From Podarcis erhardii (taxonomy: Eukaryota): a stretch of 64,000 nt of DNA. This document shows positions 21,921 to 48,889 of the stretch, piece by piece. The stretch lies in the NCBI GenBank assembly GCA_964252035.1, contig OZ176204.1; one strand, 5' to 3'. How positions within the stretch are numbered: the first letter of the stretch is position 1; every line of letters begins with the position of its first letter. The position numbers were made by a program, and so were the translations under genes. The notes under the pieces are model-generated. The model was not told where the DNA came from. It did no database searches and worked only from the letters and a program-made list of their open reading frames with translations.

Positions 21921-22837
21921 CTCCCCTGCTCGCATGGCGAACCTATTTGGGCTCATCCGCGAAAACTGATGGATCCTGATAGATTCCAACAAGCCTTGCG
22001 GGACCCTGCTCCTCCTGGCGACTCATTAGATGACCTTGTTGAGGACTGGAATAACCGGCTCTTGGCAGCCATTGATGAGATTGCACCTAAGCGCCCTCTG
22101 CGACCCCGTCGAAACCGGGCCCTTTGGTTTACTGAGGAGCTCCGGAAAATGAAGCGGCTAGAGCGAGTATGGCGACGGACTCGTGACGGAGCCTCCAGAA
22201 CATCTTATAGGACGCTTATGAAAGCCTATGAGATGGCTATGAAAGCTGCTAAGAAATCTTACTTTGCAGCTTCCATTGCATCCGCTAGCTCTCGCCCGAC
22301 ACAACTTTTTAGAATAATTAGATCAATAACGTCCTTACGAGGACAACCAAATTTAAGCACAAATTCGACCCACAACTGTGAGGCATTCGCGAACTTTTTT
22401 TGCGGAGAAAGTCCTGTTGCTCCGCCGTGACCTCCCTGCCAATTTAGATACAATGACTGAACTGGAGGCCCCTCGACTGACTTCAGGTCCAGTGTTGGAC
22501 CATTTCGATTGAATACTCCCTGCTGATGTGGATAGATTCCTCCAAGTTAGTAGGCCCACCACCTGCCTCCTTGATCCGTGCCCGTCTTGGCTGATTAGGG
22601 AGTGTCCAGATGTTGCGCAGACCCCCCTGGTTGAAATTATCAATTTGTCCCTTGACACAGGGACATTCCCAGGGGAACTGAAGGAAGCAGTGGTATGTCC
22701 ACTCTTAAAGAAAACTTCATTAGATCCCTTAGACCTATCCAATTACCGCCCAGTTTCAAATCTTCCATATCTGGGTAAGGTAATTGAGAGAGCGGTTGCT
22801 GAACAGCTTGGTAGGTTTCTGGAGGAAACATTGGCTT
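21921..22837 (+). mobile_element. L2-clade LINE, 5' part (5'-truncated ORF2), interrupted by the L1 composite
   Basis: Peptides RPTTCLLDPCPSWL and DLSNYRPVSNLPYLGKVIERAV. The reading continues after the L1 at 33412 (LDPFQSGFRPGFGTETAL). TSD GAAACATTGGCTT at 22825-22837 and 33412-33424. Confidence 0.9.
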
Positions 22838-22840
22838 AAG

Positions 22841-23166
22841 GACTTCCGGTCAGCGCCAGCGATTAATGGCGGACTTCTCCCGGAGCTCCGAGAGAAGTCT
22901 GCTCCGCGGGTTCGGGTCCTGCCGCTACGGCAAAGCGGGGACCCTCAGAAATTGCAGGCAGTGAAGCCTGCAAACAAGGAGGCTCGGCGGGTGCCTTAGG
23001 GGTCTCCCCAAACCATGAAGGAGCCTTTTTAAAGGCTTCGGAACGGCGCAGGGGGAGCGCGGCACTGAGAGCTGTCACCCAGTCTGTGGAGCGAAGCCGC
23101 ATCGCCATTATCGGAGAGCGCTGATTTCTTCCTGCAAATTGGATCCAAAAACAACTACTCGTGAGT
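22841..23166 (+). promoter_or_regulatory. CpG-rich L1 5' end: probable internal Pol II promoter and structured 5' leader
   Basis: ETS-like ACTTCCGG at the start, YY1-like AATGGCGG at 22865-22872, GTGAGT donor-like motif at 23161. Homologous to 44183-44515. Promoter role is inferred by analogy to mammalian L1. Confidence 0.65.
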
Positions 23167-23244
23167 AGGACTAAAAAGCGTAATTGGACTTAAGAATTTT
23201 ACAAATTCCGTCACGGGAAAAGGTACAAAAAGGAAGTCTGCCTT

Positions 23245-26200
23245 GGGAAACTGCTAGCATAGCAGTTGAAAAAAAGACAAAAATTAAATATAGTTACAAA
23301 TCTAGAGATTGAAGGGAGAATTGTTCAGAAACCCGAGGAAATTAGAAAGTGTTTCCAGAGATATTTCAAAGAACTTTATGCACAAGGGCTGCAGAAAGAG
23401 TTTGAGGTGGATCAATATGTCAAAACCAATGGATTACAAAAAATACCCCAGGAAATGAGAACAATCCTGAATGGTAAAATTACACGGCAGGAAATCGAAA
23501 GTGTCATACAGAACCTCCAACTAGGCAAATCTCCAGGCCCTGATGGACTTACCTCCAAATATTACAAGGTTTTGAAGGACTACTTGATACAACCCTTGAT
23601 GGAGGTCTGTAATCAGATTATGGAGGGGAGGAAGGCACCGGAAACGTGGAAAGAAGCTTTCATCACATTGATACCTAAACTAGAAACTGAAAAGACCCAA
23701 CTTAAGAACTACCGTCCCATCTCACTCCTAAATGTGGATTATAAAATCTTTGCGGACATTTTGGCAAATAGATTTAAAAAAGTCCTTAATGAAGTGATCC
23801 ATAAGGACCAGGCAGGCTTTCTCCCTGGTAGGCATTTGTTTGATAACACAAGAAACATCATCGACATTTTGGAACTTTTACAAACAAATCTTAACAGTAG
23901 AGCGGTGTTAATATTTATTGATGCGGAGAAAGCCTTTGACAACATTTCTTGGATGTTTATGAAGAAAAATTTGGAAGGGATGGGAGTGCGACGGGGGTTT
24001 GAAAATGGAATAGAAGCAATTTATTCAGAGCAAAAAGCTAAATTGATTGTTAACAATGTGGTGACAGAGGAGTTCAAAATAGAAAAAGGGACACGACAGG
24101 GGTGCCCCCTATCACCTCTATTATTTATTTCAGTCCTGGAGGTGCTATTGAACATGATCAGAAAGGACCGGTTGGTACAAGGAATCGAGGTCGGAGTGAA
24201 ACAATACAAACTGAAAGCATTTGCAGATGACTTGGTATTAACATTACAGGAGCCAGTCTCTAGTTCTAAAAGAGTTTTAGAATTAATTTCTGATTTTGGT
24301 CGAGTGGCGGGATTCAAGTTGAACAAACAAAAGACTAAGGTTTTAGCAAAAAATTTGACATCTACAGAAACAGATGAGTTCCTGAAAGAGACAGAATTAA
24401 ATGTGGTTAAAAAAGTGAAATACCTAGGGGTGTATCTGACCTCCAAAAATTTGAATTTGTTTAAAGATAATTATGAGAAATGTTGGTCAGAAATTAAACG
24501 AGACATGGAAATTTGGTCAAGATTGAAACTTTCCTTGTTAGGTCGAATAGCAGCTATAAAGATGAATGTATTGCCGAAAATGTTATTATTGTTTCAGACC
24601 CTACAGATCGTGGACAAGGTGGAATGTTTTGGAAAGTGGCAGAAGGATATTTCTAAGTTTGTTTGGCAGGGCAAAAAGCCCCGAATAAAGTTTAAAATTT
24701 TAACTGATGCGAAAGAAAGAGGGGGATTTGCCCTGCCAGACTTGAGGTTATATTATGAATCTGCAGCCTTCTGCTGGATGAAAGATTGGATTTTGCTGGA
24801 GAACACTGATGTCCTAGATCTGGAAGGGTTTGATAATGCTTTTGGGTGGCATGCATATTTGTGGTATGACAAGGTTAAAGTTCATAAACTGTTTAAAAAC
24901 CATATTGTTAGAAGAGCAATTTTTATGGTCTGGACAAAATACAAAGACTTATTGGAAAGTAAGACCCCGAGGTGGCTTTCACCGGTGGAGGCCAAGGCAC
25001 GTAAGAGACTCAATATGGAGGCCTATTGGCCAAAATATTGGGAAATAATTGAAAAAATTGGAGACAATTGGAGGTTACAGAGCTTGGAAAAATTAAAAAA
25101 CAAGGTGCGAGATTGGTTGCATTATGCCCAAATTCAGGAGGTTTTTAAAGTGGACAAAAAGGTGGGATTCCAGGTGGAAAAATCGAAATTAGAGACAGAA
25201 TTGTTAGAACCAAAAAATAAACTGCTCTCCAGAATGTACAACTTGCTGCTTAAATGGAACACACAGGACGAGATAGTCAAATCCGCCATGATAAAGTGGG
25301 CACAGGATATTGGACACAACATTATGTTTGAAGACTGGGAAAGGTTATGGAACACCGGAATGAAATTCACGGCATGTAGTGCCTTGACGGAAAATATTAT
25401 GAAAATGATATACCGGTGGTACATGACCCCAGTCAAGCTTGCTAAGATATATCACCTGTCTGATAATAAATGTTGGAAGTGTAATGAGGCGGAAGGGACA
25501 TTCTTTCACCTCTGGTGGACATGTCCGAAAGTGAGGGCCTTCTGGGAGATGATTTATAATGAGCTAAAAAAGGTATTTAGATATACCTTACCTAAGAAAC
25601 CGGAGGCCTTTCTTCTGGGCATTGTAGACCAGAATGTGTTAAAGAAGGATAGAACCTTTTTTATGTATGCTACTACTGCAGCAAGAATTCTCATCGCAAA
25701 GCATTGGAAGACACAAGATTTACCCACGCTGGAGGAATGGCAGACGCAGTTGATGGACTATATGGAATTGGCTGAAATGACTGGCAGAATCCGAGACTTG
25801 GGAGAAGAAGCAATGGAAGAGGACTGGAAAAAATTTAAGGACTATCTACAAAAACATTATAAGTTGTATGAATGCTAAGAAAATGCACCTTTTAGGAAAT
25901 CTTAGCCCCAGCAATAGCAATTAGGTGAAATGAAAATTAAGGTACAAGAAATTTGAGGTGGAATTAGGAAATAATTTTATTGTGTTTTAATTAAAATATA
26001 TAAGAATTGGTGTACAATATTTGGAATTTGATAACATGATAAATTGAAAGATACAATAAGTTATGAAATAAGATGACAAATTGCTGAAGTTTGTATTATA
26101 AATAATGCAAGGTCTGGAGGATGTGGGGAAGTCCAGTAGATTTGATAAAAGGATTACGGAAATTTGAAACTTTTATATTCTTTTTCTTTTATCTGTTTTT

Positions 26201-26272
26201 CTTTTCTGTATCTCTGTATCCTGTAAAATTAATAAAAATATTTTTAAAAAAATAAAAAAACAAAAAAACAAA
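23245..26272 (+). mobile_element. 5'-truncated L1 nested in the 5' UTR of the outer L1
   Basis: 20-bp TSD ACAAAAAGGAAGTCTGCCTT at 23225-23244 and 26273-26292. Patterned A-rich tail. Confidence 0.93.
23266..25878 (+). CDS. L1 ORF2 fragment (RT and C-terminal CCHC, EN lost by truncation), 870 open codons
   Basis: KSPGPDG, NYRPISLLNVDYK, DAEKAFD, GTRQGCPLSP, FADD, YLG, CWKC...HLWWTC. The start codon is only an ORF-caller artefact because the element is truncated. Confidence 0.9.
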   Translation: MKKRQKLNIVTNLEIEGRIVQKPEEIRKCFQRYFKELYAQGLQKEFEVDQYVKTNGLQKIPQEMRTILNGKITRQEIESVIQNLQLGKSPGPDGLTSKYYKVLKDYLIQPLMEVCNQIMEGRKAPETWKEAFITLIPKLETEKTQLKNYRPISLLNVDYKIFADILANRFKKVLNEVIHKDQAGFLPGRHLFDNTRNIIDILELLQTNLNSRAVLIFIDAEKAFDNISWMFMKKNLEGMGVRRGFENGIEAIYSEQKAKLIVNNVVTEEFKIEKGTRQGCPLSPLLFISVLEVLLNMIRKDRLVQGIEVGVKQYKLKAFADDLVLTLQEPVSSSKRVLELISDFGRVAGFKLNKQKTKVLAKNLTSTETDEFLKETELNVVKKVKYLGVYLTSKNLNLFKDNYEKCWSEIKRDMEIWSRLKLSLLGRIAAIKMNVLPKMLLLFQTLQIVDKVECFGKWQKDISKFVWQGKKPRIKFKILTDAKERGGFALPDLRLYYESAAFCWMKDWILLENTDVLDLEGFDNAFGWHAYLWYDKVKVHKLFKNHIVRRAIFMVWTKYKDLLESKTPRWLSPVEAKARKRLNMEAYWPKYWEIIEKIGDNWRLQSLEKLKNKVRDWLHYAQIQEVFKVDKKVGFQVEKSKLETELLEPKNKLLSRMYNLLLKWNTQDEIVKSAMIKWAQDIGHNIMFEDWERLWNTGMKFTACSALTENIMKMIYRWYMTPVKLAKIYHLSDNKCWKCNEAEGTFFHLWWTCPKVRAFWEMIYNELKKVFRYTLPKKPEAFLLGIVDQNVLKKDRTFFMYATTAARILIAKHWKTQDLPTLEEWQTQLMDYMELAEMTGRIRDLGEEAMEEDWKKFKDYLQKHYKLYEC

Positions 26273-26419
26273 ACAAAAAGGAAGTCTGCCTTTTCGATCT
26301 GTAGACACAGCAAAGCAAAGAGACTGCTAAACTGTAACCTTTGAAGACTGCTTTTGGTTAAAACAAAATAAAAAAATTCCTTCCAGTAGCACCTTAAAGA
26401 CCAACTGAGTTAGTTCTAG

Positions 26420-26457
26420 GTATGAGCTTTCGTGTGCATGCACACTTCTTCAGATAC
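26420..26457 (-). ncRNA. Mirror copy of the hammerhead ribozyme in the inverted Penelope arm
   Basis: Exact reverse complement of 27611-27648. Sense to the ATRNL1 pre-mRNA. Confidence 0.78.
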
Positions 26458-26969
26458 ACTGAAACAGAAGTCACCGGACCTTTCTATATAGTGAGAAGGT
26501 GGGGAGGGGTATTACTCAGAAGGGTGGTGGGAATGGGTGATTGGCAGATAGCTGCGATGAGCCTGTTGACGACTCTTAACGACTGCAATAGGTCTAACAG
26601 GAAAAAGCAAGGGGTGGGAAGGTGAAAAATGGCTTTGTCATGTATAATGAGATAAGAATCCAATGTCTTTGTTCAAACCAGGTCTCTCCATAGTTTTAAG
26701 TTTGGTGATAAGTTGCAATTCAGCAGCTTCTCTTTCCAGTCTATTTCTGAAATTCCTTTGTAATAGAACAGCTACTTTGAGATCTTGTATAGAATGTCCT
26801 GGGAGATTGAAGTGTTCTCCTACTGGTTTTTCTGTCTTGTGGTTCCTGATGTCGGATTTATGTCCGTTTATTCTTTGGCGTAAGGTCTGGCCTGTTTGTC
26901 CAATATAGAGAGCTGAAGGACACTGTTGGCATTTTATGGCATACACAATGTTAGACGATGAGCAATTAA

Positions 26970-27430
26970 CCAAAAGACCTAACACGGACACTGGCACCAG
27001 AGCCTGCAATAAACCCAGATGCCAACTTTGCTGCCACATACACCCGGACAACACCATTACTGGCCCCAACAACATCACACATACCATCTCGGGACTATTT
27101 AATTGCTCATCGTCTAACATTGTGTATGCCATAAAATGCCAACAGTGTCCTTCAGCTCTCTATATTGGACAAACAGGCCAGACCTTACGCCAAAGAATAA
27201 ACGGACATAAATCCGACATCAGGAACCACAAGACAGAAAAACCAGTAGGAGAACACTTCAATCTCCCAGGACATTCTATACAAGATCTCAAAGTAGCTGT
27301 TCTATTACAAAGGAATTTCAGAAATAGACTGGAAAGAGAAGCTGCTGAATTGCAACTTATCACCAAACTTAAAACTATGGAGAGACCTGGTTTGAACAAA
27401 GACATTGGATTCTTATCTCATTATACATGA
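26970..27430 (+). CDS. C-terminal GIY-YIG endonuclease of the Penelope ORF (truncated)
   Basis: CNKPRCQLCCH linker motif, then NIVYAIKC...LYIGQTGQTLRQRINGH...REAAE...GLN. Confidence 0.88.
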
Positions 27431-27610
27431 CAAAGCCATTTTTCACCTTCCCACCCCTTGCTTTTTCCTGTTAGACCTATTGCAGTCGTTAAGAGTCGTC
27501 AACAGGCTCATCGCAGCTATCTGCCAATCACCCATTCCCACCACCCTTCTGAGTAATACCCCTCCCCACCTTCTCACTATATAGAAAGGTCCGGTGACTT
27601 CTGTTTCAGT

Positions 27611-27648
27611 GTATCTGAAGAAGTGTGCATGCACACGAAAGCTCATAC
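27611..27648 (+). ncRNA. Minimal type I hammerhead ribozyme in the Penelope pLTR
   Basis: GTAT-CTGAAGA-A-GTGTGCATGCACAC-GAAA-GCTC-ATAC: stem I GUAU/AUAC, CUGANGA and GAAA core, palindromic stem II and palindromic AGCU stem III. Cleavage predicted after C27644. Confidence 0.8.
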
Positions 27649-28247
27649 CTAGAACTAACTCAGTTGGTCTTTAAGGTGCTACTGGAAGGAATTTTTTTAT
27701 TTTGTTTTGACCATGGCAGACCAACACGGCTACCTATCTGTAACTGCTTTTGGTTAAGTGTAACCCATTGATAAAAAGCAAGAACTAACCCCCCACCTAG
27801 CCAGCAGGAGCGGTGGGGAGAATTTCTGTTGAAAGTTTATTTCCTGCATGAAGGGAGAAGGGAAATTATATCCATTGTCTTTGCATCCTGAGGGAGGACT
27901 GCCTTGAAAGAGATAAAGACCTCTTAATTTTGGAATAACTTTAGGAACTTTACTGAACTTTACTGAAAGTTACTGTATCTGAGACTGTTTTTTAAAACTG
28001 TTACATATCTGCAACAAAAAGCTGGAACTAAGGCTTTCCCCTTTCTTTTAAGAAGAACTGGGGGGGGGCTACAAAAAGTATCCTTATTCTAAAAGACTCT
28101 GTAACTAAGCTGAGAACTTCCCCCCCTAGAGGAGACTTTGTTACTTTTGAAACAACTAAACTACTAGAAGCCCAGCCAGTGGAAATTTCCTATTGAAAAC
28201 AAACTGCTAAGTGTGGGACTGACCTTGACTGGGCATGATAGTGGCAT

Positions 28248-28822
28248 GGCAAATGGTAAAGAAAAGATAGAATCACTTCAGGAGAAAAGCCTCAGATCCG
28301 GTAAACATTACAGAAGGGCCTCATTGACAGGAGCAGCTGCAGCCTCACAAAAAAAATCTAAAGCTATGTCATCAGAAGATGTTTTGGCCAAAGCACTGGA
28401 AAAAATAAATCAATCTTTGGAACTTCTCACGAAACAAGGGAATGATACAAGTAAACAAACACTGGAAATTGAAGATTCTTTTGTGGAGATTTTTAAAGAT
28501 ATTCCTAAGCCTATTCTAGATGTGAGAGGTGACTACAGAGAGTTAGTCATATTATTGAAGAAAAGCAGAATCTTCTTTAGATGGGAATTTCCTCAAGGCC
28601 TGTCTTTTAAATACAGAGGGGGGAAAAATAAGAATTAAGACACCGAGCGACAAAGACAAATTTTTGAGAGAACACGAAGAAGATCTTGTGAAGGAGGCGG
28701 AAGCTGGAGAGGAACAAACACCATCGGGAAAGGGAATCTTGGACTTAGCAAACTTATCGTTTGGATTGCAGCTACCAACAGAAGAGGAACAACAACTAGG
28801 AGCTGTAGGAGGAGTAAGTAAA
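28248..28822 (+). pseudogene. Outer-L1 ORF1 remnant: N-terminus joined directly to the C-terminal domain
   Basis: IFKDIPKPILDVRGDYRELVILLKKSRIFFRWEFPQGLSFKYRG fits the L1 ORF1p CTD pattern. Frameshift near 28625. Acidic tail ends just before the ORF2 ATG. Confidence 0.7.
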
Positions 28823-28832
28823 TAACCCCATC

Positions 28833-31800
28833 ATGGCTTTGCGACTTCTGAGCTGGAACTGTAATGGTTTGAACATCCCTCGGAAGAGGAAGAATGTATT
28901 TCATATATTAAACAAGCAACAATTGGACTTAATTTGTTTACAAGAGACACGTGATGAGAACACATAGAAGATTACTTACTAACAAAAAATTAGGACAAGA
29001 ATTTGTCTCATCTGATAGAGGGGAAAAAAGAGGAGTTGTTATATATGCAAAAGACAAATTGATGCCGAAATTGAAATTTAAAGATGAACAAGGAAGATAT
29101 CTGGCAATTGAAATTCAAATCCAAGGACAGAAATTTTTGATTGTAGGAGTCTATGCACCAAATGAAAGTAAATCTGAATTCTTTAAGAAGTTGCATGAGA
29201 TCTTGTTGGACTTTTTAGAATGGAATGTAATTTTGATGGGAGATATGAATGGAGTTGTTTCCACAAACATGGATAAAGCGCAAAGACAAGTAATATTGAA
29301 GGATGGAAGACTACCAAAAACTTTTTTTGAATTGACTGACAATATGGATTTGGTTGACATTTGGAGAACAAAGAATCCCCTTGAAAGAGAGGGAACCTTC
29401 TTTTCTGAAGCCAAAATGACCTGGACTAGAATTGACCAAATATGGGCTACTAGAGGATTGGCACCAAAGATAAAAAAAGTGGAAATCTGCCCAAAAACAT
29501 GCTCTGACCATAACGCCGTGAAGATGGAAATGAACCAAACAACAGCTGGCACCTTCAGATGGAGAATGAATGACACCCTATTCAGAGACAAAGAATTCTG
29601 TAAAAAGGCCCCAAAAACATTGAGAGACTATTTTGAGATCAACCTGAAGACAAACGTTGAAAAAAGAGTAATCTGGGACGCAAGTAAAGCTGTTATGAGA
29701 GGGTTCTTGATACAACAAAATGCAATAAAAAAGAGAAGCCAGAATGCGAAAAAGGATAAGATTTTGGAAAAGATAAAAGAAGGAGAAAAGAAATTAAGAT
29801 CAAAACCAAAGTCTCAGGACATCTTGAGAGAAATTAAATTATATCAGGTCCAGTATATGGAATTGATGAACCAAGAAATAGAATGGAAAATTAAACAAAT
29901 GAGACAGAAGACCTTTGAATCCGCCGATAAATGTGGTAAATTTCTGGCTTGGCAATTGAAGAAGAGACAAAAACTGAATACAGTGACAAATTTGGAAGTG
30001 GATGGAAAGAACATTTATAACCCAACTGAAATCAGAAGCTGTTTCCAGAGATATTTTAAACAATTGTATGCACAAGGGCGACAAAAAGACTCTGATATAG
30101 AACAATTTTTGGAGAAAAATGGATTGAAGGAAATCTCAAGTGAGGGTAAAGTACTTTTGAATCAGAAAATAACAGAACAAGAAATTAGAGAGTGCCATTC
30201 AAAGTATGCAACTGGGCAAATCTCCGGGGCCTGATGGACTGACTTCCAAATATTATAAAGCTTTAAAGGAATGGATACTACAACCTTTGAAGGAAGTCTG
30301 TAACGAGATTCTTGAGGGGGAAAAGGCACCTGATACGTGGAAAGAGGCCTACATCACGCTTATACCGAAGACAGAGACTGAGAAGACCCAACTTAAGAAC
30401 TACCGCCCAATTTCTTTACTAAATGTGGATTACAAAATCTTTGCTGACATCTTAGCTAGAAGATTGAAAAAGGTATTGATGGGGGAGATTCATAGTGACC
30501 AAGCAGGCTTTCTCCCGAGAAGACATTTATCAGATAATGTAAGGAATATAATAGACATTTTGGAGATGTTAGAAGTTAATATAAACCTAACTCCTAATTC
30601 CTTTTTGTTAGGAATTACAGGAAGCGAGATCAATAGAAGTGATTATAAACTTTTTCAATATGCAGTGACTGCGGCAAGAATTTTAATGGCTCAAAAATGG
30701 AAACAAGAAGATTTACCAACATTGGAAGAATGGAGACGGAAATTGATGGACTTTGCTGAATTAGACAAACTGACAGGAAAAATCAGATACCAAAAGGATC
30801 ACAAGTTCATACAGGACTGGAGAAAGTTTACGATTTATCTGGAAAATATATGTGATGAACAGACAACGCTAGTCGGTTTTAAAGAGGCTTTGTGAGGAGA
30901 AAGGGTGTTGTAAGAGGGGAAAGAGCTGTAAAGATTTACTAACTAGCAATACAATTATAAAGGAAATGTGAATTAAATTTTAAAATCATGAGGATTGTGG
31001 AGGGAGCTGGGGGAAGTCTAAAAGAATTTATGTATTATATTGGAAAGTATGTGTTATTTAAATTTGTAAAAGAAAAACTTTTCTAAAAAATTAATAAAAT
31101 AAAAAAAAAGAAGTTAATATAAACACAAAAGCTGTTTTGATATTTGTGGACGCGGAGAAAGCCTTTGACAATATTTCTTGGACCTTTATGAAGAAGAATC
31201 TCCATGGTATGGGGGTAGGCCAAGGGTTTCAAAACGGTATAGGCGCAATATATTCTGAACAAAAGGCTAAACTTATAGTGAACAATGTGATTACGGAAGA
31301 ACTTAAAATTGAGAAAGGGACACGTCAGGGGTGCCCAATCTCCCCGTTACTCTTTATTTCGGTACTGGAGGTTTTGTTAAACATGATAAGAAAGGACCAG
31401 TTGGTTAAAGGGGTCCAGGTCGGAGCGAAACAATATAAATTGAGAGCTTTTGCAGATGATTTGGTACTTACATTACAAGAGCCAGAATCTAGTACTAAAA
31501 GAGTTTTGGAACTGATGCAAGAATTTGGTCAAATGGCAGGGTTTAAATTGAATAAGTTAAAAACTAAGGTATTAGAGAAAAACTTAACAGATATTGAGAA
31601 AGAGAAGTTTCAGAATGAGACAGGTTTAACTGTGGTTAAGAGTGTAAAATATTTGGGGATCAACATGACAGCTAAAAATATGAACTTATTTAAAGATAAC
31701 TATGAGAAATGTTGGAAACAAGTGAAAAAAGACTTAGAAATCGGGTCAAACCTTCAAGTTTGAAAGCTTCCTTTCCTTGTCTGGTCGAATAGCAGTTATA

Positions 31801-33120
31801 AAGATGAATGTATTGCCTAGAATGTTGTTTTTGTTTCAAACTTTGCAAATTGTGGACAAGATGGACTGTTTCAAGGGTTGGCAGCAAGACATTTCTAAAT
31901 TTATCTGGCAGGGCAAAAAACCCAGGATAAAATTTAAGATTTTAACTGACGCAAAGGAAAGAGGGGGATTTGCCCTGCCGGATTTGAAACTTTATTATGA
32001 ATCAGCAGCTTTCTGCTGGTTAAAGGACTGGCTGCTTCTCGAGAACACAGACATTTTGGATTTGGAAGGATTTAACAATTTCTTTGGGTGGCATGCATAT
32101 TTGTGGTATGACAAGGTTAAGGTGCATAAAGGTTTTAAAAACCATATTGTCAGGAAAGCATTATATAATGTCTGGATTAAATACAAAGACTTGCTGGAGA
32201 ACAAAACTCCAAGGTGGCTGTCACCAATGGAGGCAAAAGCTTTGAAAAAACTTAATATGGAGGCTAAATGGCCAAAATATTGTGAAATTTTAGAACAGGA
32301 GGGTGATAAATGGAAATTGCAGAGTTTTGAGAATCTAAAAGATAAAGTGCGAGATTGGCTTCATTATTATCAAATATTGGAGGTCTATAAGTTGGACAGG
32401 AAAATTGGCTTTCAGGTGGAAAAATCAAAACTGGAAACAGAGTTGCTAGAATCCAATACTAAGAATTTGTCAAAAATGTATAACTTGCTGTTGAAATGGA
32501 ATACACAGGACGAAACAGTTAAATCAGCTATGATTAAGTGGGCTCAAGATATTGGTCATAACATTATGTTTGCTGACTGGGAAAGGTTGTGGACCACCGG
32601 TATGAAATTCACGGCATGTAATGCCTTGAGAGAGAATATTATGAAAATGATCTATAGGTGGTACATGACCCCAGTCAAGCTTGCAAAAATTTACCACTTA
32701 CCAGATAACAAATGTTGGAAATGTAAAGAAAATGAAGGTACATTCTTTCACCTCTGGTGGACATGCCCAAGGATTAAGGCTTTCTGGGAAATGATATATA
32801 ATGAAATGAAAAAGGTATTTAAATATACCTTCCTGAAGAAACCAGAGGCCTTTCTCCTGGGTATGGTAAGCCACGTGGTGTTAAAGAAGGACAGAACTTT
32901 TTTTATGTACGCTACTACAGCAGCAAGGATTCTCATAGCAAAGTATTGGAAGACACCAGATCTACCCACTCTGGAAGAATTGCAGATGAAGATGACAGAA
33001 TACATGGGACTGGCAGAGATGACTGGCAGAATCCGAGACCAGGACAAAGAGACAGTGGAAGAAGATTGGAAGAAGTTTAAAGACTATCTTAATAAACATT
33101 ACAAAATTAATGAAGGCTAA
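28833..33120 (+). pseudogene. Outer-L1 ORF2 (APE EN, RT, CCHC), broken by frameshifts (~28950, ~30190, ~31760) and a nested insert
   Basis: MALRLLSWNCNGLN...ICLQET, GVYAPN, MGDMN, SDHN, KSPGPDG, DAEKAFD, FADD, CWKC..HLWWTC. Confidence 0.9.
30587..31108 (+). mobile_element. 3' end of a more divergent L1 subfamily inserted into ORF2 of the outer L1
   Basis: 16-bp TSD AGAAGTTAATATAAAC at 30571-30586 and 31109-31124. Encodes an ORF2 C-terminal ~100 aa, a 3' UTR and poly(A). Confidence 0.92.
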
Positions 33121-33411
33121 AAAGATATGGGTTTTAAAAATTAGTGGTTTGCAGGGGCATTGATTAAGGAAAAAGAATAGAATTAATAAAAACTATGGGA
33201 AATGTGGGAATGGATTTGCTGATAAAATAAATGAGATTAGAATACAGAAGGGGGAGGTGTGAGGAGGTCAGTGAAATTAGGTTTAGAAAATATGGTTTGA
33301 ACTTATACTTGTTTTTGATTTGTTTGTTTGTTCGTTTATGTTTTTATTGTCCTTTGTGTTTATATGTGTTTATTCAAAACTTTAATAAATATCATTTAAA
33401 AAAAAAAAGAA

Positions 33412-34845
33412 GAAACATTGGCTTTAGATCCATTTCAGTCTGGTTTCCGTCCTGGTTTTGGGACCGAGACGGCTCTGGTTGCCCTAACAGACGATCTCCG
33501 TAGACAGCTGGATCGAGGCGGGTCAGGACTGGTGATCCTTTTGATCACCAGCCTTTGACATGGTTGATCATGATCTTCTGGACCACTGCCTCGCAGACGT
33601 GGGGATACAGGGCATAGCCCGTAACTGGCTGTGCTCTTTTATCTCTGGTCGGGGACAGAGGGTGGCACTAGGGAGGGAAATGTCGTCGCGCCACTCCTTG
33701 GTGTGTGGAGTGCTGCAGGGCGCAATCCTCTCCCCAATGCTTTTTAACATCTTTATGCGCCCCCTTGCCCAGATTATCCGGAGCTTTGGGCTGGGCTGTC
33801 ACCAATATGCTGATGACACTCAGCTCTATCTGCTGATGGATGGCCACACCGACTCGGCCCCGAACACACTGACCAGATGCTTGGAAGCTGTGGCTGGATG
33901 GTTTCGTGGGAGCCGATTGAAACTAAATCCTTCGAAGACAGAGGTCCTATGGCTGGGTGGGGATGGCATGGGGATGAGGGACCAACTCCCTTCTCTTGCG
34001 GGGGCCCGATTAGTGCCATTGCCTTCCGTTCAGAGTTTGGGTGTAATCCTTGACGCCTCCCTTTCCAGCAACAGCCAAGGTGACATTTTTCCACCTTCGC
34101 CACATCAAGCAGTTGGTCCCTTACCTTTCCCTCCCCGACCTGGCCACAGTGATCCATGCGACGGTCATCTCCAGGCCTGACTACTGTAATTCGCTCTATG
34201 CGGGGCTGCCCTTGAAGCTGTCCTAGAAACTCCAGCGGGTGCAGAATGCTGCAGCGAGACTCCTCACGGGTCTCTGCCATGGGAGCATATTCACCCAGTG
34301 CTTTTCAAGCTGCACTGGCTCCCGGTGGAGTATAGGATCAGATTTAAGGTGCTGCTTTTGACCTTTAAAGCCCTTCACGGCCTAGGACCCTCGTACCTAC
34401 GGGACCGCCTCTCCCAGTATGCCCCACGGAGAGCCTCAAGGTCCATAAATAGCAACACCCTTGTGGTCCCGGGCCCTAAGGAAGTTAGATTGGCTTCAAC
34501 CAGAGCCAGGGCCTTTTCAACTCTGGCTCCGGTCTGATGGAACGCTCTGTCTCACGAGACCAGGGCCCTGCAGGATCTGATTTCTTTCCGCAGGGCCTGT
34601 AACACAGAGTTGTTCCGCCTGGCCTTTGGCTTGGAGCCAATTTGATTCCCTCCCTCCCTCTCTTTCTTTTTCTTTTCCTTCTCCTTCTGCGATGAGGCTA
34701 CATTTTAATATTTTAATGTTTCAATATTTTAATGTTGTATTTTTTAATTTTGTTTTTAAGTTGTAATCATTTAACTTGTTTTTATTATTGCTTGTAAGCC
34801 GCTCTGAGCCCGGCCTTGGCTGGGGAGGGCGGGGTATAAATAAAA

Positions 34846-42870: not shown

Positions 42871-44182
42871 TGCATAGTGCATCACATAGGCCCCTTATAT
42901 TTATAAGTTTGGTTCATTTACAGCTATCAAGGCAGAAGGCAACTTGAGGCTTTTCCCTAGCCTGTGTGTGTATTCCAGACTTAGCCATACTTGGTAGCTA
43001 TGACTAACTTAAGTCTCATTAATTTCAATGAGCCTACTGGAAGCATGAGAAAGTTTATATGCAATCTATCCATCTATCTATCTTGATATAGATATATTTG
43101 TGGAACTGCTTACTACCAATTTGTATGTTGGGAGGCGAATGAATGCATATGATTCTGTTTCCAAGTAGAAGATTGATATCTTTTGATACTTGCTTTAAGA
43201 GCCCAACAGGTTGCCAGCACCGGAGCATGCCATTTTACAAATCGTAACAATTTCTCCAAACTAACACAACTCTCTCACATCCCTTTTACATTATATGTTT
43301 GTGGCAAATCAGCCACAAGACTTTAAACTTTCCCTTCATCTGCAGATGGTCATTCAATCACTTTCATGAGTGAGCCTCCCTTTTTGGAAGAGCTAGGAGC
43401 AGCCAGAGGTCCTATGTTCTGTGTAATATGGCCGCAATTATTATTCCTTTTTTTAAAAAAAAAATTACTACTCTCTTGGCTATGCAGACAGACTTCCATC
43501 ATTTGAAAACAAAAACCTCTGTTCACTCTGAACACATTATGATCATATTAAATAGGGCTGAGATTTCCAATGTCACCTAAGGAAATTTGAAGCACTGTTC
43601 CTATTAAAGTTAATGGACAGAGAATATCCAAATCCCTTTGAAAACTGCAGCCAATAGATATGTTACCAACTGCAAAACTTGACAGCTGATTAAGAGAAAT
43701 CTATCTTTCATAATGATGCAGTGGATATAGTACAAGTGGAGCCTTATTAGAAACTTAACCAAATTATTCCAGAAATTCACGTTCTTCTCTGCATGATATA
43801 ATAGGAGGGGAAACAAGCAAGAGCTATTTGATTTACTTCATGATATACTGATTTTGAAGCTTTAGCTCACTTCAGTGTGATAATAAATTGCATTAAGCCC
43901 CTGTGTGCTGTTCAATAGCTTGCTACAACAGTATTAATGAAATTAGAAGGTCGTTCAATCTAATTATGTTTGTTTTCAGTTCAAATTAGAAAGATGTCCG
44001 TTAAATATTCAATTTACACAATATCTGTGCAATTTTATATCAGAATGATTAAATCAGAATGAGGAAGTGGGACTCAAAATTGATTTAACCACTGGAACAT
44101 TTTACAGACAATCAACATACACAATAGGAGAGGTACATAAGCCCTTAAGGAAATGGGGAATGCATACAAAATCCCCCACTCA

Positions 44183-46033
44183 AGGACTTCCGGGTTAGCG
44201 CGAACGGCTAATGGCGGATTCCCTCCGAGCTCCGGAGGGAATCGGCTCTACTGAGGACGGGTCTTGCCGTGCCGGCGACACGGGGACCCTCAGAAACCGC
44301 AGGCGCGGAAGCCTGCGGACTTGGTGACTCGGTGGGCACCTTAAGCGCCCTCCCCGACCCACGAAGAGCCTTTTTAAAGGCTGCGGAGAGGGTACGGAGA
44401 GTGGCGTGGTGCTGAGAGTAGACCGCTACCTCAGTAGAGCGAAGCCGCAAGCCATGGCCGGAGAGCGCTGACTTTCTTCCCAAAATTTGGACTGGATAAC
44501 AAAGGACCCGTGAGTAGTGGAATTTGGACTTTAAAAATTTTATCCTGTGAATTCGGCACGATCGGGGGATGTGTTAAAGGGAAGTCCGCACCCCCTCTAC
44601 TTATAGACGTTTCAAAGCAAGGAACGGAGATTTAAGGCGGAATGAATACTGTTTTGATGATTTAAAAGTTTCTCACAAATTTGATAGAACAAGATTTTTG
44701 TGCTGGAGAGAAAGGGAATTTGGAATTTTGTGTGTATCCCCCCCAAAAAACCCGGGAGTGTCCTATTTGGGTCCCGGAGGAAGAAGTGAAAGGAGTTTGA
44801 CAGCTGTCAAAGAAGCTGTCAAACGGGCGGACAAAGTAAAGAATTTTGCTATTCAATAACTCTTGGAATTAAAGCTGATACATTTGGACTGAGGCGATTG
44901 GAAACAAAGTATTGATAATAACAAAGTAACAGATTATTGGAAAAGGACTACTAAATAACTGAAAGCCCCCTAGGGGGAATTAGTGACATTACAATGGCTG
45001 CAGAGGGAAAATTACTGGCGGAGATAGAAAAAATGTTCTTTCTCGTGGGAATCCTGCAGGAGCAGAGTATGGCTCTGAGTAAAGTTTTTATGACCTTGAA
45101 TCCTGAAACAAACAACTCTGCTGAATGCACAAAGGAGATGCATGATAAAAATTCTGCAGCTGAGCAGGAAGAGATGCCTTTGGAATTGACAGAGAAAAAA
45201 GAAGGAGTTCAGACACTACAAGTGGAAAATATCAACCAGGAATCTGCAGCGTTAGAGTATGAGCAAGAAGACCTCTGGATTACAGACCTGCGAAAGATGA
45301 GAAAGAAGAAGAGAGAAGCCCCTGGAGTACTTGGAATATTAAAACTAGAAGGAACAAAGCAATATGATTGGGACTTTTCTCTTGAGTATGGAAAACTAGA
45401 TGGTCTTTCGCAGCAAACACTCTTCAACATTCTGAATGAAAGAAAATATGATCTGACTCTGACTGAACTCCTTCGGGGTCTTAGGACCATCAAAGAGGAC
45501 TACCAATATAGTTGGCAGAGAGGGACTGACAGAGAATCAGACGCCTCGGACGTGAGGAATCCGGGCTAGAAATATTTTTTGTTTGTTTTCTGGACATTTG
45601 TCTAGGAAGGGACAGAAACCGGGGCAGGGGGGGGAGAGAATAGAATTATAAAATGTTATGTTTTGTTTTACTTGGTCAATGTGACCTATAATTAATATAA
45701 TAAAGGGAAAATTTGTGAAGGGGAAGTTAGATCGACCTTAAAAAAAAAGAAATTAATGATTATAAGAGAATTGGATAGTTGAATATAGATAAACAAAAGA
45801 ATTTAATTTTTAAAAGCAATGTGAATATCTTTAAGAGGTTAGGTAAGAACTTGCTGAATTAATTTTGGAATTGGGATGTAAGAGGAGGGGGTGGGGGGAA
45901 GTCAATGAAAGTGGGTAAAGAAACTTAGGGTATGGAATTGTATTTGTGTGTTTGTTTGTCTTTGTCTTTGTGTGTGTGTCTGTTGTTATAAAATGTAAAA
46001 ACCCAATAAAAATTATTTTAAAAAAAAAAAAAA
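44183..46033 (+). mobile_element. 1.85-kb non-autonomous L1-like retroposon (L1-type 5' end, one short ORF, L1-type 3' end, poly(A))
   Basis: 17-bp TSD ACAAAATCCCCCACTCA at 44166-44182 and 46034-46050. 5' ~330 nt homologous to 22838-23166. No EN or RT sequence. Confidence 0.88.
44994..45569 (+). CDS. 191-aa ORF of the short L1-like element, function unknown
   Basis: Uninterrupted ATG-to-TAG ORF in good Kozak context (acaATGG), sitting in the ORF1 position. Acidic and helical-looking. Weak ungapped similarity of residues 1-30 to the outer-L1 ORF1 N-terminus. Confidence 0.6.
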   Translation: MAAEGKLLAEIEKMFFLVGILQEQSMALSKVFMTLNPETNNSAECTKEMHDKNSAAEQEEMPLELTEKKEGVQTLQVENINQESAALEYEQEDLWITDLRKMRKKKREAPGVLGILKLEGTKQYDWDFSLEYGKLDGLSQQTLFNILNERKYDLTLTELLRGLRTIKEDYQYSWQRGTDRESDASDVRNPG

Positions 46034-48889
46034 ACAAAATCCCCCACTCACATTAACTTGCCCATTCACTTAGCATACAGAACTTCTTTTTGCACTGGAG
46101 TAGAGAGGGAAAGTCAAGAACTTTTGGTGCACAACATAAGGACACACAGGGCTTTAAGATAATGCACTTACCTAGCGCTGCACCCATAATGGATGCTCCT
46201 GTTCAGGGTTTCAACTATGCCTCCTTCATTAAACTATAAATTAAAAGGTAAAGGGGGGCTCAAAGAGGCAAATTATTTTGCTCCCTCCTCTCCTTTTATT
46301 TTCCAACTGATACTTAACATATTCAGTTCCCTTTAGAATGTTTTTGGAAGGGATTCTGAGCTTTTAAAGCATTTTGTAATTTTATATAGCTGGAGATTAA
46401 TCCAAGCATGTAGATACCTCCCTCCTAATTCACAATGGCCCTGTTTTGACTCCAATCCTGTTGACATTCAGGATTGAAAAATTGTTATCTTTAAAAAAAA
46501 GGCATCTGGTAAACAGATGTATACACTCGTTCCCACAATGGCCCTCAATTTCTGAAACCCAGGAAGGGTGGGGAAGTACTAACTGAGGGGAGGGGACAAC
46601 ACACAGTGTGAATACATCCCACCAAGCACTGCCCACCAGTGTAAGATGGAAACATGACAGTTGAAAGTGCTTGTGTGTGGATGAAGAAAAAGCACACAAA
46701 ATTGCACATGAAAAATTCTATCTGTGTTACCCATGTGCACATTAATACTTTGGTGTATGTATAGCCATAGGCAAACACCATCCTTTGCTATTCCTGGTGA
46801 ACAGTATTGCAGCCTTAGTTACTATTTTTAAACTCCTTAGTTTCTTGCTGCCTGATTTGTATTTAGCAACATATGTATTATACAGGAGTATAATACAGGA
46901 GTGACAAATGCCCTTTAAACACTGTTCTCTGATTGTGGTCTCTAGTGTCAGTTCTTCTATGCACTCTGGTGATCAAAGGCCCAATCAATTTGCCAACATG
47001 TGTTCTGAGCCTTTTAACTCAGCAGCAGCACAGCCTCCCATTGTCCCTGATTATGGTTTCCCCCTCCTGCTTCCAGTCCAGTGACATATGCTTCTATTTG
47101 TGTAAACAAGGACTAAGATTCTGTGATTTATCCTTGAGAGATAATATCATGGAGGAACACATATCTCTGTCTCTTTCAAAGAATGGGTCCCAGAGCTGTT
47201 AGACCTCTTTCTCTTTCTTACATAACTTCAGAAATTTATGATTTAATCTATTTCATGGATGACATCTGAACTTCAGACTTGATTGGACTTAGTCTAGTCC
47301 AAGTATCTTCAAACTTTTCACACCCAGGGTCCTCTTTTAACCCAAACATGTATTTGGGGACCCATTTTTAACATTTTACTATATATTTGCATGGTGGCAG
47401 TTCTCTTGCTGCGACCCACTAGCAGGCCCTGACCCAGCAGTTGATACAGCAGTTGTATATAGAAGGATCACCATAAGGTTTAATAAACCTCTGCTTTCTC
47501 TTTCCTGTGCATGGTCTGTGCATGCATGCATGCCCCAAATCATATCATTATGGGGAATGGGAATCCTGTTCACCCATCTTCCATATTTCCATATAGTTGT
47601 TCTCCTCCACAATTCTCTCCAGTAATGCGAGTTTGTAGCTAAGTGCAAATGCTCTCTACTATGTCCTGCAACCACACATGGTTGGAGGACTCTTAGTGGA
47701 CTGGATTACACCCAGTCTAATTTAGTACTATATGGTACCATCCATATAATGTGATTTTTACCCTTTGGAAATATATAGCAAAGTTAAATGAAAGTCACTT
47801 GAAGACTCAATGGAATTAACATTTGTGAAACATTGCTTACAACCTTTTTATACTGCACTAGTTTCTAATTGCCTGATTTCTTCCCTTGTCTTGTAATCAA
47901 TGTTAACTAGAAAAGTTAATACGTTTTGCAAAAGAAAATTCATTAGCATTTAATTTAGATCTCTTCTTCTGTCCCCTATATAGCAATCTTTACAAAGCTT
48001 TAAAAGTCTACAAGGTTAAAACAACAAAAAGTTTTGCAAACGGTTAGACAGTGTTATAAAACATTCTCTCACAAACTCTTTCAGCAACATTCTGTAGTTC
48101 AATGCCCCCACCCCTGGACCAAGAGCTTTCTAGACTAGCATAAAAAAAGTGGCTATGCATTATATATATATGTGCAAGGATATATAGCTATATTTTATAC
48201 TTTCATTTACAGTTCTCCCCAAATATTGTGGCCTTTACTTAGAAAATTAGTTGTTCATATGTTCCACTGAAATAAACAGGATACTTTTCAATGAGACTTC
48301 AGTAAAACTAACTTTCTCTGGGTTTGAGTATCTGTTTTATGTTACATAGTAAGCATTCATAATCTAGGCATTCTAATATCTATAAAGCTGCCCAATAGAC
48401 AATATTATATATAGACAATTGCCTGAATTTTTCAGTGTTATTACTTTAGTTCTCCAACATGCCTCTACTTATAAAATTAAGACCAATTGCAGTAACAGAG
48501 AGGGCCCACTCCCGACCTCAGCCCACCTGAGCTGCGCACAAGCAGGTGGAGACTATGCCTGTATGTAACCTGTTTCTGCTCCTCCTGCTTCAATCGTCTG
48601 CTGGTTCTAGGAGACAGTGGAGCATGAAAGGTGGGGGCAGGAGGTCGTGGTAAGCTCTTGACTCTACACCAGCCTGACCTATCTCTCCCTCCTCCTGCAC
48701 CTATTCTTCACTCGCCATTCCTGCAGCTTCTCCTGCCTCTGACTCTTGTCTCCTGGCTGTTACAGGCTCTCCCAGGTCACTGATCCCTTCTTCCAAGTCA
48801 GATGCCAACCCCCTTCTCCCAGTGCCCATTCATCCGTATCCAGTCACCACTCCTCAGCGTCCAGTCAGTCCCTGACACTGCAGAGTGCC

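What the first reader, a model, noticed from the sequence alone, without database searches (positions are those of the whole stretch)
22850..23124. Covariation-supported ~275-nt multi-branched RNA structure at the 5' end of squamate L1-type elements
The 5' ends of the outer L1 (22850-23124) and the short element (44194-44472) are clearly diverged, yet by eye they fold identically, with substitutions paired across helices. Closing stem: TCAGCGC/GCGCTGA vs GTTAGCGC/GCGCTGAC. P2: CGAT-TAATGGCG/CGCCATTATCG vs CGGC-TAATGGC/GCCATGGCCG (2 compensatory pairs). Hairpin 1: GACTTCTC/GAGAAGTC vs GATTCCCT/AGGGAATC (4). P3: GCTCCGCG/TGTGGAGC vs a perfect 12-bp GCTCTACTGAGG/CCTCAGTAGAGC. Hairpin 2: GGGTCY-TG bulge-CCGCT/AGCGG vs CCGTG/CACGG (2), with 7-nt loops ACGGCAA and CCGGCGA. 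Hairpin 3: TTGCAGGC/GCCTGCAA vs CCGCAGGC/GCCTGCGG (2). Long arm: GCTC/GAGC vs ACTC/GAGT and GTGCC/GGCAC vs GCACC/GGTGC (3), capped by an invariant AGCCTTT-TT-AAAGGCT hairpin. Single-stranded linkers TCAGAAA and GAAGCCGCA are invariant, and the loop CGGC could pair with linker GCCG (speculative pseudoknot). About a dozen compensatory pairs point to selection on an RNA fold rather than on DNA promoter motifs alone. I do not recognise it as a described family. Candidate roles (inference): self-cleaving 5' ribozyme as in R2/RTE elements, IRES or translation control, or an RNP packaging signal that the non-autonomous element must retain.
Basis: partly seen in the sequence, partly recalled or inferred. 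Interest (0 to 1): 0.85.

Follow-up and report, generated by a model that had tools for sequence, protein, structure and literature searches.

The report
Structured RNA head of lizard L1
The first ~290 bases of wall-lizard L1 jumping genes fold into one large branched RNA shape that evolution has kept intact by paired mutations, which points to an undescribed RNA-level function at the start of these elements.

Summary
Window 22848-23126 and 44193-44473 are nt ~11-289 of two complete L1-type retroposons with target-site duplications: an L1 at 22838-33411 and a 1.85-kb half-L1 at 44183-46034. Both fold into the same closed multi-branch structure (z -5.2 and -9.1). I fetched four more heads from full-length L1s of Podarcis lilfordi. 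Across the six heads (57-81% identical), 92.9% of pair cells are paired and 34 of 91 pairs carry changes on both sides (slid controls 3-11; 0 of 500 shuffles). A fold derived from the two window copies alone predicts 88% pairing in the four held-out heads (controls 40-50%). G-U cells outnumber A-C cells 50 to 14, and the sense strand folds 8-20 kcal/mol better, so this is a sense-strand RNA. Rfam has no match. Published work noted the conserved lizard L1 5' terminus (GACTTCCGG...ATGGCG) but did not fold it. Function is inferred only. My best guess is a cis-acting protein-binding or RNP platform, with translation control the main rival; a ribozyme is unlikely. An Anolis L1 head shares the terminal motifs and a closed fold, but my model does not detect it. 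The scan's other notes did not report this structure on other DNA.

The parts
22838..33411 (+). Outer full-length L1. Its 5'UTR is interrupted by a nested 5'-truncated L1 (23245-26272) and a Penelope-like fragment (~26380-27900). ORF1 remnant at 28213-28638; ORF2 in pieces at 28833-33120.
   Evidence: TSD GAAACATTGGCTT at 22825-22837 and 33412-33424, poly(A) before the 3' copy. Pfam endonuclease and RT domains. Nested-element TSD.
22838..22849 (+). 5' terminus AAGGACTTCCGG. It holds the ETS-type core CCGGAAGT on the minus strand, lies outside the fold, and is probably an internal-promoter or start-site motif.
   Evidence: Shared by both window elements and by the L032 and L034 heads; variant GGACTTCCTGG in L029 and GGAGCTTCCGG in L035. 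Matches the published Anolis and zebrafish L1 terminus.
22848..23126 (+). Structured RNA domain of the outer L1, 279 nt in 11 helices. Closing stem 22848-22856/23118-23126. P2 22860-22871/23103-23113. Hairpin 1 22872-22899. P3 22901-22912/23081-23092. Hairpin 2 22914-22944. Hairpin 3 22952-22973. Long arm 22981-23073 with apical hairpin 23020-23039.
   Evidence: Fold; model R1 score 289 bits; helix coordinates; covariation.
22866..22872 (+). ATGGCGG, a YY1-like core inside the 5' strand of P2. It is invariant in all six Podarcis heads and present in Anolis.
   Evidence: The published Anolis consensus ends in ATGGCG. The YY1 assignment rests on my own knowledge and was not tested.
23093..23100 (+). 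Invariant unpaired linker GAAGCCGC. Its GCCG is complementary to the invariant CGGC of the hairpin-2 loop (22928-22931). This is a possible tertiary pairing or a protein contact.
   Evidence: Invariant in six copies that are 57-81% identical. There is no variation, so no covariation test is possible.
44183..46034 (+). Complete 1.85-kb non-autonomous half-L1 with a 191-aa ORF (44994-45569) and an L1-type 3' end.
   Evidence: TSD CAAAATCCCCCACTCA at 44167-44182 and 46035-46050. The ORF has seven homologues at 38-49% identity, all from Logan assemblies, and no Pfam match.
44193..44473 (+). Structured RNA domain of the short element, 281 nt, with the same 11 helices. Closing stem 44193-44201/44465-44473. 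P2 44205-44216/44450-44460. Hairpin 1 44217-44243. P3 44245-44257/44428-44440. Hairpin 2 44259-44289. Hairpin 3 44297-44318. Long arm 44326-44420.
   Evidence: Fold with z -9.08; R1 score 258 bits; coordinates.
23160..23167 (+). CGTGAGTA, a 5' splice-site-like motif downstream of the domain. It is invariant in seven aligned copies and also occurs at 44509-44516.
   Evidence: Not tested for splicing.
23232..23238 (+). GGAAGTC, a second ETS-type core about 395 nt from the 5' end and the reverse complement of the terminal GACTTCC. It also occurs at 44580-44586.
   Evidence: Invariant in seven copies.

Best explanation
Nucleotides ~11-289 of the sense transcript of Podarcis L1 elements, and of a non-autonomous half-L1 derived from them, form a closed multi-branch RNA domain. 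It has a closing stem, P2, three hairpins, a long-range helix P3 and a long bulged arm. Purifying selection has kept this fold by compensatory substitution across at least four co-existing L1 families. This much is shown.

The 5' edge of the domain overlaps DNA motifs of the internal promoter: ACTTCCGG (ETS-type) at the very start and ATGGCGG (YY1-like). That overlap would explain why the 5' strand of P2 is invariant while its 3' partner drifts. This step is inferred.

As the most likely function, I propose that the domain is a cis-acting recognition and assembly platform on L1 RNA. L1 ORF1p or ORF2p, or a host protein, would bind it to mark the RNA for RNP formation and productive, full-length retrotransposition. 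A trans-mobilised half-L1 would therefore have to retain it. This would be analogous in logic to the 5' protein-binding RNA of R2.

I put about 0.9 on 'selected sense-strand RNA structure' and about 0.35 on this particular function.
For: - **Same fold in six copies.** z-scores are -4.1 to -9.1.
- **Covariation.** In the model-based alignment, 92.9% of cells are paired and 34 of 91 pairs change on both sides, against 3-11 when partners are slid and a shuffle mean of 15.4 (0 of 500 shuffles reach the observed value). The sequence-only MAFFT alignment gives 32 of 93.
- **Held-out test.** The fold derived from the two window copies gives 88.1% pairing and 14 new double changes in four P. lilfordi heads, against 40-50% and 2-5 in the slid controls.
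- **Repeated compensation.** Every pairwise comparison shows 9-19 compensated pairs, even at 80% identity.
- **Long-range helices.** P3 has 8 of 12 covarying pairs; its two strands lie about 170 nt apart.
- **Strand.** G-U 50 cells against A-C 14, and the sense fold is 8-20 kcal/mol more stable than the antisense fold in all seven heads.
- **Platform idea.** Invariant unpaired stretches (GAAGCCGC, the CGGC loop, CGGA, internal loops of the long arm) suggest contacts beyond helices. The half-L1 keeps the domain. A half-L1 family only 40% identical in protein still ends its head with the same P2 and closing-stem strand (L024).
Against: No experiment or binding data exists, and the function is pure inference. 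Retention by the half-L1 is equally explained by the need for the promoter or for translation of its 191-aa ORF.

There are only six sequences, from two closely related species. The model-based alignment leans towards the structure; this is offset by the MAFFT and held-out tests. Helix 9 is weak at 78.6% paired.

L1 is not known to need a 5' binding site, and the known ORF2p anchor is the poly(A) tail (my own knowledge).
Confidence: 0.4

Rival explanations
1. Translation control. The domain is part of a cap-independent or shunting device (IRES-like), or a regulated block, that governs translation of ORF1 or of the half-L1 ORF.
For: A fold of -136 to -158 kcal/mol begins 10 nt from the 5' end. 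From established knowledge of scanning, this should impede 43S loading. The 5'UTRs are 812-1948 nt long and carry 5-13 upstream ATGs. The half-L1 that keeps the domain has an intact ORF.
Against: The domain lies 500-1600 nt upstream of the start codons, which is far for an IRES core. No similarity to any Rfam IRES family. Nothing was tested functionally.
Confidence: 0.25
2. RNA metabolism. A cap-proximal domain that stabilises the transcript (resistance to 5'-3' decay), aids export, or acts co-transcriptionally with the nearby U1-type site to favour full-length transcripts.
For: It sits at the extreme 5' end. An invariant 5' splice-site-like CGTGAGTA lies 35-45 nt after it in seven copies. Anolis work reports about 40% full-length L1 insertions (PMC5389967).
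Against: No resemblance to known exonuclease-resistant RNAs in Rfam. The link to the CGTGAGTA motif is positional only. The Anolis head lacks that motif.
Confidence: 0.15
3. Self-cleaving ribozyme that trims the element out of read-through transcripts, as HDV-like ribozymes do in R2, RTE and L1Tc.
For: A large conserved fold at the 5' end of a non-LTR element, with invariant unpaired nucleotides. There is a precedent in other clades (my own knowledge) and a small ribozyme in the human L1 5'UTR (PMC11620745).
Against: The whole domain plus 10 upstream nucleotides is inherited, so cleavage would have to occur upstream of an unpaired leader. The 5' ends vary by 0-3 extra G or A (GACTTCC, GGACTTCC, GGGGACTTCC, AAGGACTTCC). 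This is as expected for capped Pol II starts and not for a fixed cleavage site. The leader is a promoter-type ETS motif conserved as far as zebrafish L1. No Rfam ribozyme hit even at E up to 10. The topology is not a nested double pseudoknot.
Confidence: 0.05
4. DNA-level feature only. Palindromic transcription-factor sites of the internal promoter give an incidental fold.
For: ETS-type and YY1-like motifs sit at the start. The hairpin-1 apex CCGGAGCTCCGG is a perfect DNA palindrome in several copies. The published view is a conserved promoter terminus.
Against: Compensatory changes occur in helices whose strands lie 170-270 nt apart (helices 1, 2, 4). G-U outnumbers A-C 50 to 14, and the sense strand is consistently more stable than the antisense. 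Hairpin 1 is kept where the palindrome is lost (L029, L035).
Confidence: 0.03
5. A captured cellular structured RNA (SINE-like head or chimeric retrocopy), or a conserved antisense ORF (ORF0-like), explains the conservation.
For: All six heads have a stop-free antisense frame of 90-102 codons.
Against: No Rfam family matches. The antisense frames are in different phases at shared anchor motifs, and their translations differ. No homologous proteins were found. Base composition (A 0.20, C 0.28, G 0.35, T 0.17) makes antisense stops rare.
Confidence: 0.02

Closest known systems
Conserved 5' terminus of Anolis L1 'clade 1' families (Boissinot & Sookdeo 2016, PMC5381506)
   Same: The terminal motifs are the same: GACTTCCGGT ... 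ATGGCG. The 5'UTR is long with a CpG-rich start and is conserved across divergent co-existing families. One Anolis head (L027:4624-4915) also folds into a closed domain of about 290 nt with a GGUGCGC/GCGCAUU closing stem, z -3.5.
   Different: The paper treats the terminus as a DNA or promoter feature. It used RNAfold only on the ORF1-ORF2 spacer, not on the 5'UTR. Spacing between the two motifs is longer in Podarcis. The interior is not alignable, and the Podarcis model does not detect the Anolis head.
R2 retrotransposon 5' RNA: the roughly 300-nt structured, pseudoknot-bearing protein-binding region, and the HDV-like ribozyme at the R2 5' end (my own knowledge)
   Same: A large conserved RNA fold at the extreme 5' end of a non-LTR retrotransposon transcript, maintained by covariation. 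The R2 case is a precedent for such a fold directing the element's own protein.
   Different: Different clade, no sequence or Rfam relation, and a different topology. R2 is co-transcribed with rRNA and self-cleaves, whereas these L1s start at a promoter-type motif with variable extra G. Protein binding is untested here.
Human L1 5'UTR elements: YY1 site at the start and the minimal twister-sister-like ribozyme (PMC11620745)
   Same: The L1 5'UTR combines start-site transcription-factor motifs with functional RNA. An ATGGCGG core recalls the mammalian YY1 site CAAGATGGC noted.
   Different: The human ribozyme needs only about 35 nt and lies internally. No homologous 5'UTR sequence is shared, since mammalian 5'UTRs turn over rapidly. 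Here the structure is a 280-nt domain conserved across families.
3' stem-loops of stringent-type LINEs such as eel UnaL2 or zebrafish L2 (my own knowledge)
   Same: A cis-acting RNA structure that partner non-autonomous elements must share with the LINE.
   Different: Those are small 3' hairpins recognised by the RT to start reverse transcription. This one is a large 5' domain.

Membership tests
HDV-like self-cleaving ribozymes of non-LTR elements | Nested double-pseudoknot fold with P1 starting at the first nucleotide of the element | tested here: not met
   The fold is a closed multi-branch domain that starts 10 nt after the terminus. No HDV or CPEB3-type Rfam hit at E up to 10.
HDV-like self-cleaving ribozymes of non-LTR elements | Self-cleavage at a fixed 5' position | not testable with these tools
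   Indirect only: the 5' ends vary by 0-3 extra bases, which argues against a fixed cleavage site.
Any Rfam 15 family (ribozymes, IRES, snRNA, 7SL, SINE source RNAs) | Covariance-model score at or above gathering, or a suggestive sub-threshold hit | tested here: not met
   Zero gathering hits in the window. Only chance miRNA or lncRNA fragments at E 0.15-8. The same tool found a 7SK gene in L029, so it does detect structured RNAs.
Lizard L1 clade-1 5' terminus (Boissinot & Sookdeo) | Element begins GACTTCCGGTG-N8-ATGGCG | tested here: inconclusive
   Both motifs are present and terminal in Podarcis. The spacer is about 14 nt rather than about 8, and the base after GGT differs. The Anolis example L027 fits the published consensus.
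Lizard L1 clade-1 5' terminus (Boissinot & Sookdeo) | Belongs to full-length L1 with a long (0.8-1.5 kb) 5'UTR, ORF1 and ORF2 | tested here: met
   L029, L032 and L034 are 5.96-6.17-kb L1s with TSDs, and EN and RT genes are called in L029. The outer L1 has EN and RT domains.
R2-type 5' protein-binding RNA | Structured ~300-nt RNA at the 5' end, kept by covariation | tested here: met
   This is a resemblance in kind only; no homology is implied.
R2-type 5' protein-binding RNA | Conserved pseudoknot, and binding by the element's protein | not testable with these tools
   The loop CGGC and the linker GCCG are complementary, but both are invariant. Binding needs experiments.
Antisense ORF0-like coding region | Reading frame and protein sequence conserved among copies | tested here: not met
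   Phases differ at anchor motifs and translations diverge. No homologues.

The most novel reading that the evidence does not exclude
The domain is the lacertid form of an ancient RNA module at the 5' end of non-mammalian vertebrate L1. Its hallmarks (GGACTTCCGG start, ATGGCG, GAGCTCCG about 40 nt in) are reported from zebrafish, frog and anole L1. The module binds the L1 proteins or the ribosome directly. In that case the puzzling cross-family conservation of 5'UTRs outside mammals would reflect RNA-structure constraint rather than the lack of an arms race. L1 would then, like R2, have a 5' RNA signal that governs RNP assembly or completion of full-length copies.
Probability: 0.15. Interest if true: 0.85.

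Novelty: new variant of a known kind. Interest (0 to 1): 0.68.

Why it matters
L1 is the best-studied retrotransposon, yet no large covariation-supported RNA domain is known in its 5'UTR. Mammalian 5'UTRs turn over too fast to show one. Lizards carry many divergent, concurrently active L1 families, and that diversity exposes such a domain here.

The finding offers a concrete alternative explanation for the published puzzle that non-mammalian L1 5'UTRs are conserved across families. It also gives a candidate new RNA family and a defined set of helices for disrupt-and-restore experiments. Those experiments could separate promoter, translation and RNP roles at the L1 5' end, and could explain what half-L1 parasites must copy from their master elements.

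Tried and rejected
- **Rfam.** Searched at gathering and permissive thresholds on the window and on fetched loci; nothing found.
- **More copies in the window.** Four motif searches, blastn and the covariance model found only the two.
- **Pattern scans.** Scans of metagenome contigs and viral contigs gave 23 loci, all chance matches. The metagenome scan is now spent.
- **Antisense ORF as a way to fetch heads.** No homologues. The ORF itself was rejected as coding.
- **Homologues of the half-L1 protein.** All lie on ~1-kb Logan contigs that break inside or after the head.
- **Loci that gave no head.** Logan L1 contigs L030 and L031 start after the head. The Varanus locus L026 has no L1 5' end. 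P. lilfordi L028 is 5'-truncated. P. muralis L033 gave no head. One place (P0128) was withheld by the tool and I did not pursue it.
- **Anolis head.** Not detected by the Podarcis model even with filters off.
- **Paper supplement.** The supplement with Anolis consensus sequences is not held.
- **Literature.** Searches for an L1 5' RNA structure in lizards found none.

Full report
**What is there**

The two stretches are the 5' ends of two complete retroposons.
- The outer L1 runs 22838-33411. It is flanked by the duplication GAAACATTGGCTT and ends in poly(A). It sits inside an older GC-rich RT-bearing element.
- Its 5'UTR was later hit twice: by a 5'-truncated L1 (23245-26272, TSD ACAAAAAGGAAGTCTGCCTT) and by a Penelope-like fragment.
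- The short element runs 44183-46034. It is flanked by CAAAATCCCCCACTCA and carries a 191-aa ORF.
- Both elements begin (A)AGGACTTCCGG. The best ORF2 matches are Podarcis muralis and P. lilfordi proteins, so the genome is a wall lizard.

**Check of the observation**
- RNAalifold on the pair gives 87 pairs. Seventeen are changed on both sides and none is broken.
- Only these two copies occur in the window.

**More copies**

Public metagenome and viral scans gave only chance hits. I therefore reached genomic DNA through L1 proteins and their encoding contigs.
- Four further heads came from P. lilfordi: L029:5949-6226, L032:8061-8342, L034:5358-5633 and L035:6895-7169.
- Three of them belong to 5.96-6.17-kb L1s with 19-24-bp TSDs. 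These begin GACTTCC, GGACTTCC and GGGGACTTCC.
- The four heads fold alike, with z from -4.1 to -7.0.
- The six heads are 57-81% identical.

**Covariation**
- In the sequence-only MAFFT alignment, 32 of 93 predicted pairs keep pairing through changes on both sides.
- A covariance model (R1: 278 positions, 91 pairs) finds exactly these six heads in 218 kb of lizard DNA.
- On its alignment, 92.9% of cells pair and 34 of 91 pairs have double changes. Slid partners give 40-44% pairing and 3-11 such pairs. The shuffle mean is 15.4 and no shuffle of 500 reaches 34.
- The long-range helix P3 has 8 of 12 covarying pairs.
- To avoid circularity I derived the fold from the two window copies only and scored the four held-out heads in the MAFFT alignment. 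That gave 88.1% paired and 14 pairs with novel double changes, against 40-50% and 2-5 for slid controls.
- Every pairwise comparison shows 9-19 compensated pairs, even between heads that are 80% identical.

**Which strand and which molecule**

G-U cells (50) far outnumber A-C cells (14). The sense strand folds 8-20 kcal/mol better than its complement in all six heads and in the Anolis head. The selected structure is therefore in the sense RNA.

**Alternatives removed**
- Rfam 15 has no match at gathering or permissive thresholds. The same tool found a 7SK gene in L029.
- All heads have stop-free antisense frames of 90-102 codons. The phases differ at shared anchors, the translations differ, and no homologues exist. 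Composition explains these frames.
- A DNA-palindrome reading cannot explain compensation between strands 170-270 nt apart.

**Relation to the literature**

Boissinot & Sookdeo (PMC5381506) reported three things:
- Anolis clade-1 L1 5'UTRs are unusually conserved across families, with a terminus GACTTCCGGTG-N8-ATGGCG.
- Zebrafish L1 starts with GGACTTCCGGTT.
- Frog L1 shares GAGCTCCG about 40 bp in. GAGCTCCG is the hairpin-1 loop in four of the six Podarcis heads.

They folded only the ORF1-ORF2 spacer, not the 5'UTR. A full-length Anolis L1 that I fetched (L027:4624-11323, TSD ACACCCGGGCATCCC) has a head that closes on itself over about 290 nt (z -3.5). The Podarcis model does not recognise it. 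Deeper homology of the fold remains open.

**Mechanism**

Shown: a sense-strand RNA domain under selection, starting 10 nt from the 5' end.

Inferred:
- The first ~35 nt double as promoter motifs (ETS-type ACTTCCGG, YY1-like ATGGCGG). This would explain the invariant 5' strand of P2 opposite a drifting 3' strand.
- The variable extra G at the termini fits capped Pol II transcripts and argues against a fixed ribozyme cut.
- Invariant unpaired stretches (GAAGCCGC, the CGGC loop, CGGA) suggest tertiary or protein contacts.
- The 5'UTRs are 0.8-1.9 kb long with 5-13 upstream ATGs, so ordinary scanning past a -140 kcal/mol cap-proximal fold looks inefficient.

My estimates by function:

| Reading | Probability |
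|---|---|
| cis-acting RNP or recognition platform | about 0.35-0.4 |
| translation control | 0.25 |
| transcript stability or processing | 0.15 |
| ribozyme | 0.05 |
| DNA-only feature | 0.03 |
| captured RNA or antisense ORF | 0.02 |

**Verdict**

The structure is real, well supported, and not in Rfam or in the literature I could search. The limits are six sequences from one genus and no functional data.

Noticed in passing
window 23160-23167 and 44509-44516; L029, L032, L034, L035, L024: CGTGAGTA, a perfect U1-type 5' splice-site core, is invariant 35-45 nt downstream of the domain in all seven aligned copies. Another first-stage note on this genome reports an apparent intron in an L1 5'UTR.
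   Followed up: partly
window 23232-23238 and 44580-44586: An invariant GGAAGTC lies about 395-405 nt from the 5' end. It is a second ETS-type core and the exact reverse complement of the terminal GACTTCC. It could be a second factor site or a long-range pairing partner. It shows no variation to test either reading.
   Followed up: partly
window 23245-26272: A 5'-truncated L1 with an intact 870-aa ORF (RT plus C-terminal part, 82% identical to the outer L1 over its last 444 residues) is inserted in the outer L1's 5'UTR. The insertion point is 6 nt downstream of the GGAAGTC motif, inside the 20-bp TSD that contains it.
   Followed up: yes
window ~26380-27900: An inverted duplicate of a Penelope-like GIY-YIG endonuclease region (ORF 26936-27430 and its mirror image) is nested in the outer L1. 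Another note reports a hammerhead motif at 27611-27648.
   Followed up: no
window 22863-23108 (-) and 44208-44483 (-); all fetched heads: Stop-free antisense frames of 90-102 codons span every head. They are in different phases and are explained by base composition, so they are not a conserved ORF.
   Followed up: yes
window 44994-45569: The 191-aa half-L1 ORF has no Pfam domain. Its only homologues are seven proteins at 38-49% identity on short Logan contigs, which suggests a diverse lizard-specific half-L1 protein family.
   Followed up: partly
L027 (Anolis, P0097) and L033 (P. muralis, P0231): Public gene models named 'vesicle transport protein GOT1B isoform X1' and 'stress-associated endoplasmic reticulum protein 1 isoform X1' have products that are L1 ORF2 pieces. 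These are probably annotation artefacts.
   Followed up: no
L029:15167-15495: A full-length match to 7SK RNA (183 bits) lies about 3 kb downstream of the P. lilfordi L1. It may be a gene or a retrocopy.
   Followed up: no
window 22528-22839 and ~33425-34180: The host of the outer L1 is a GC-rich (50-55%) non-LTR element whose RT domain is split by the insertion.
   Followed up: partly
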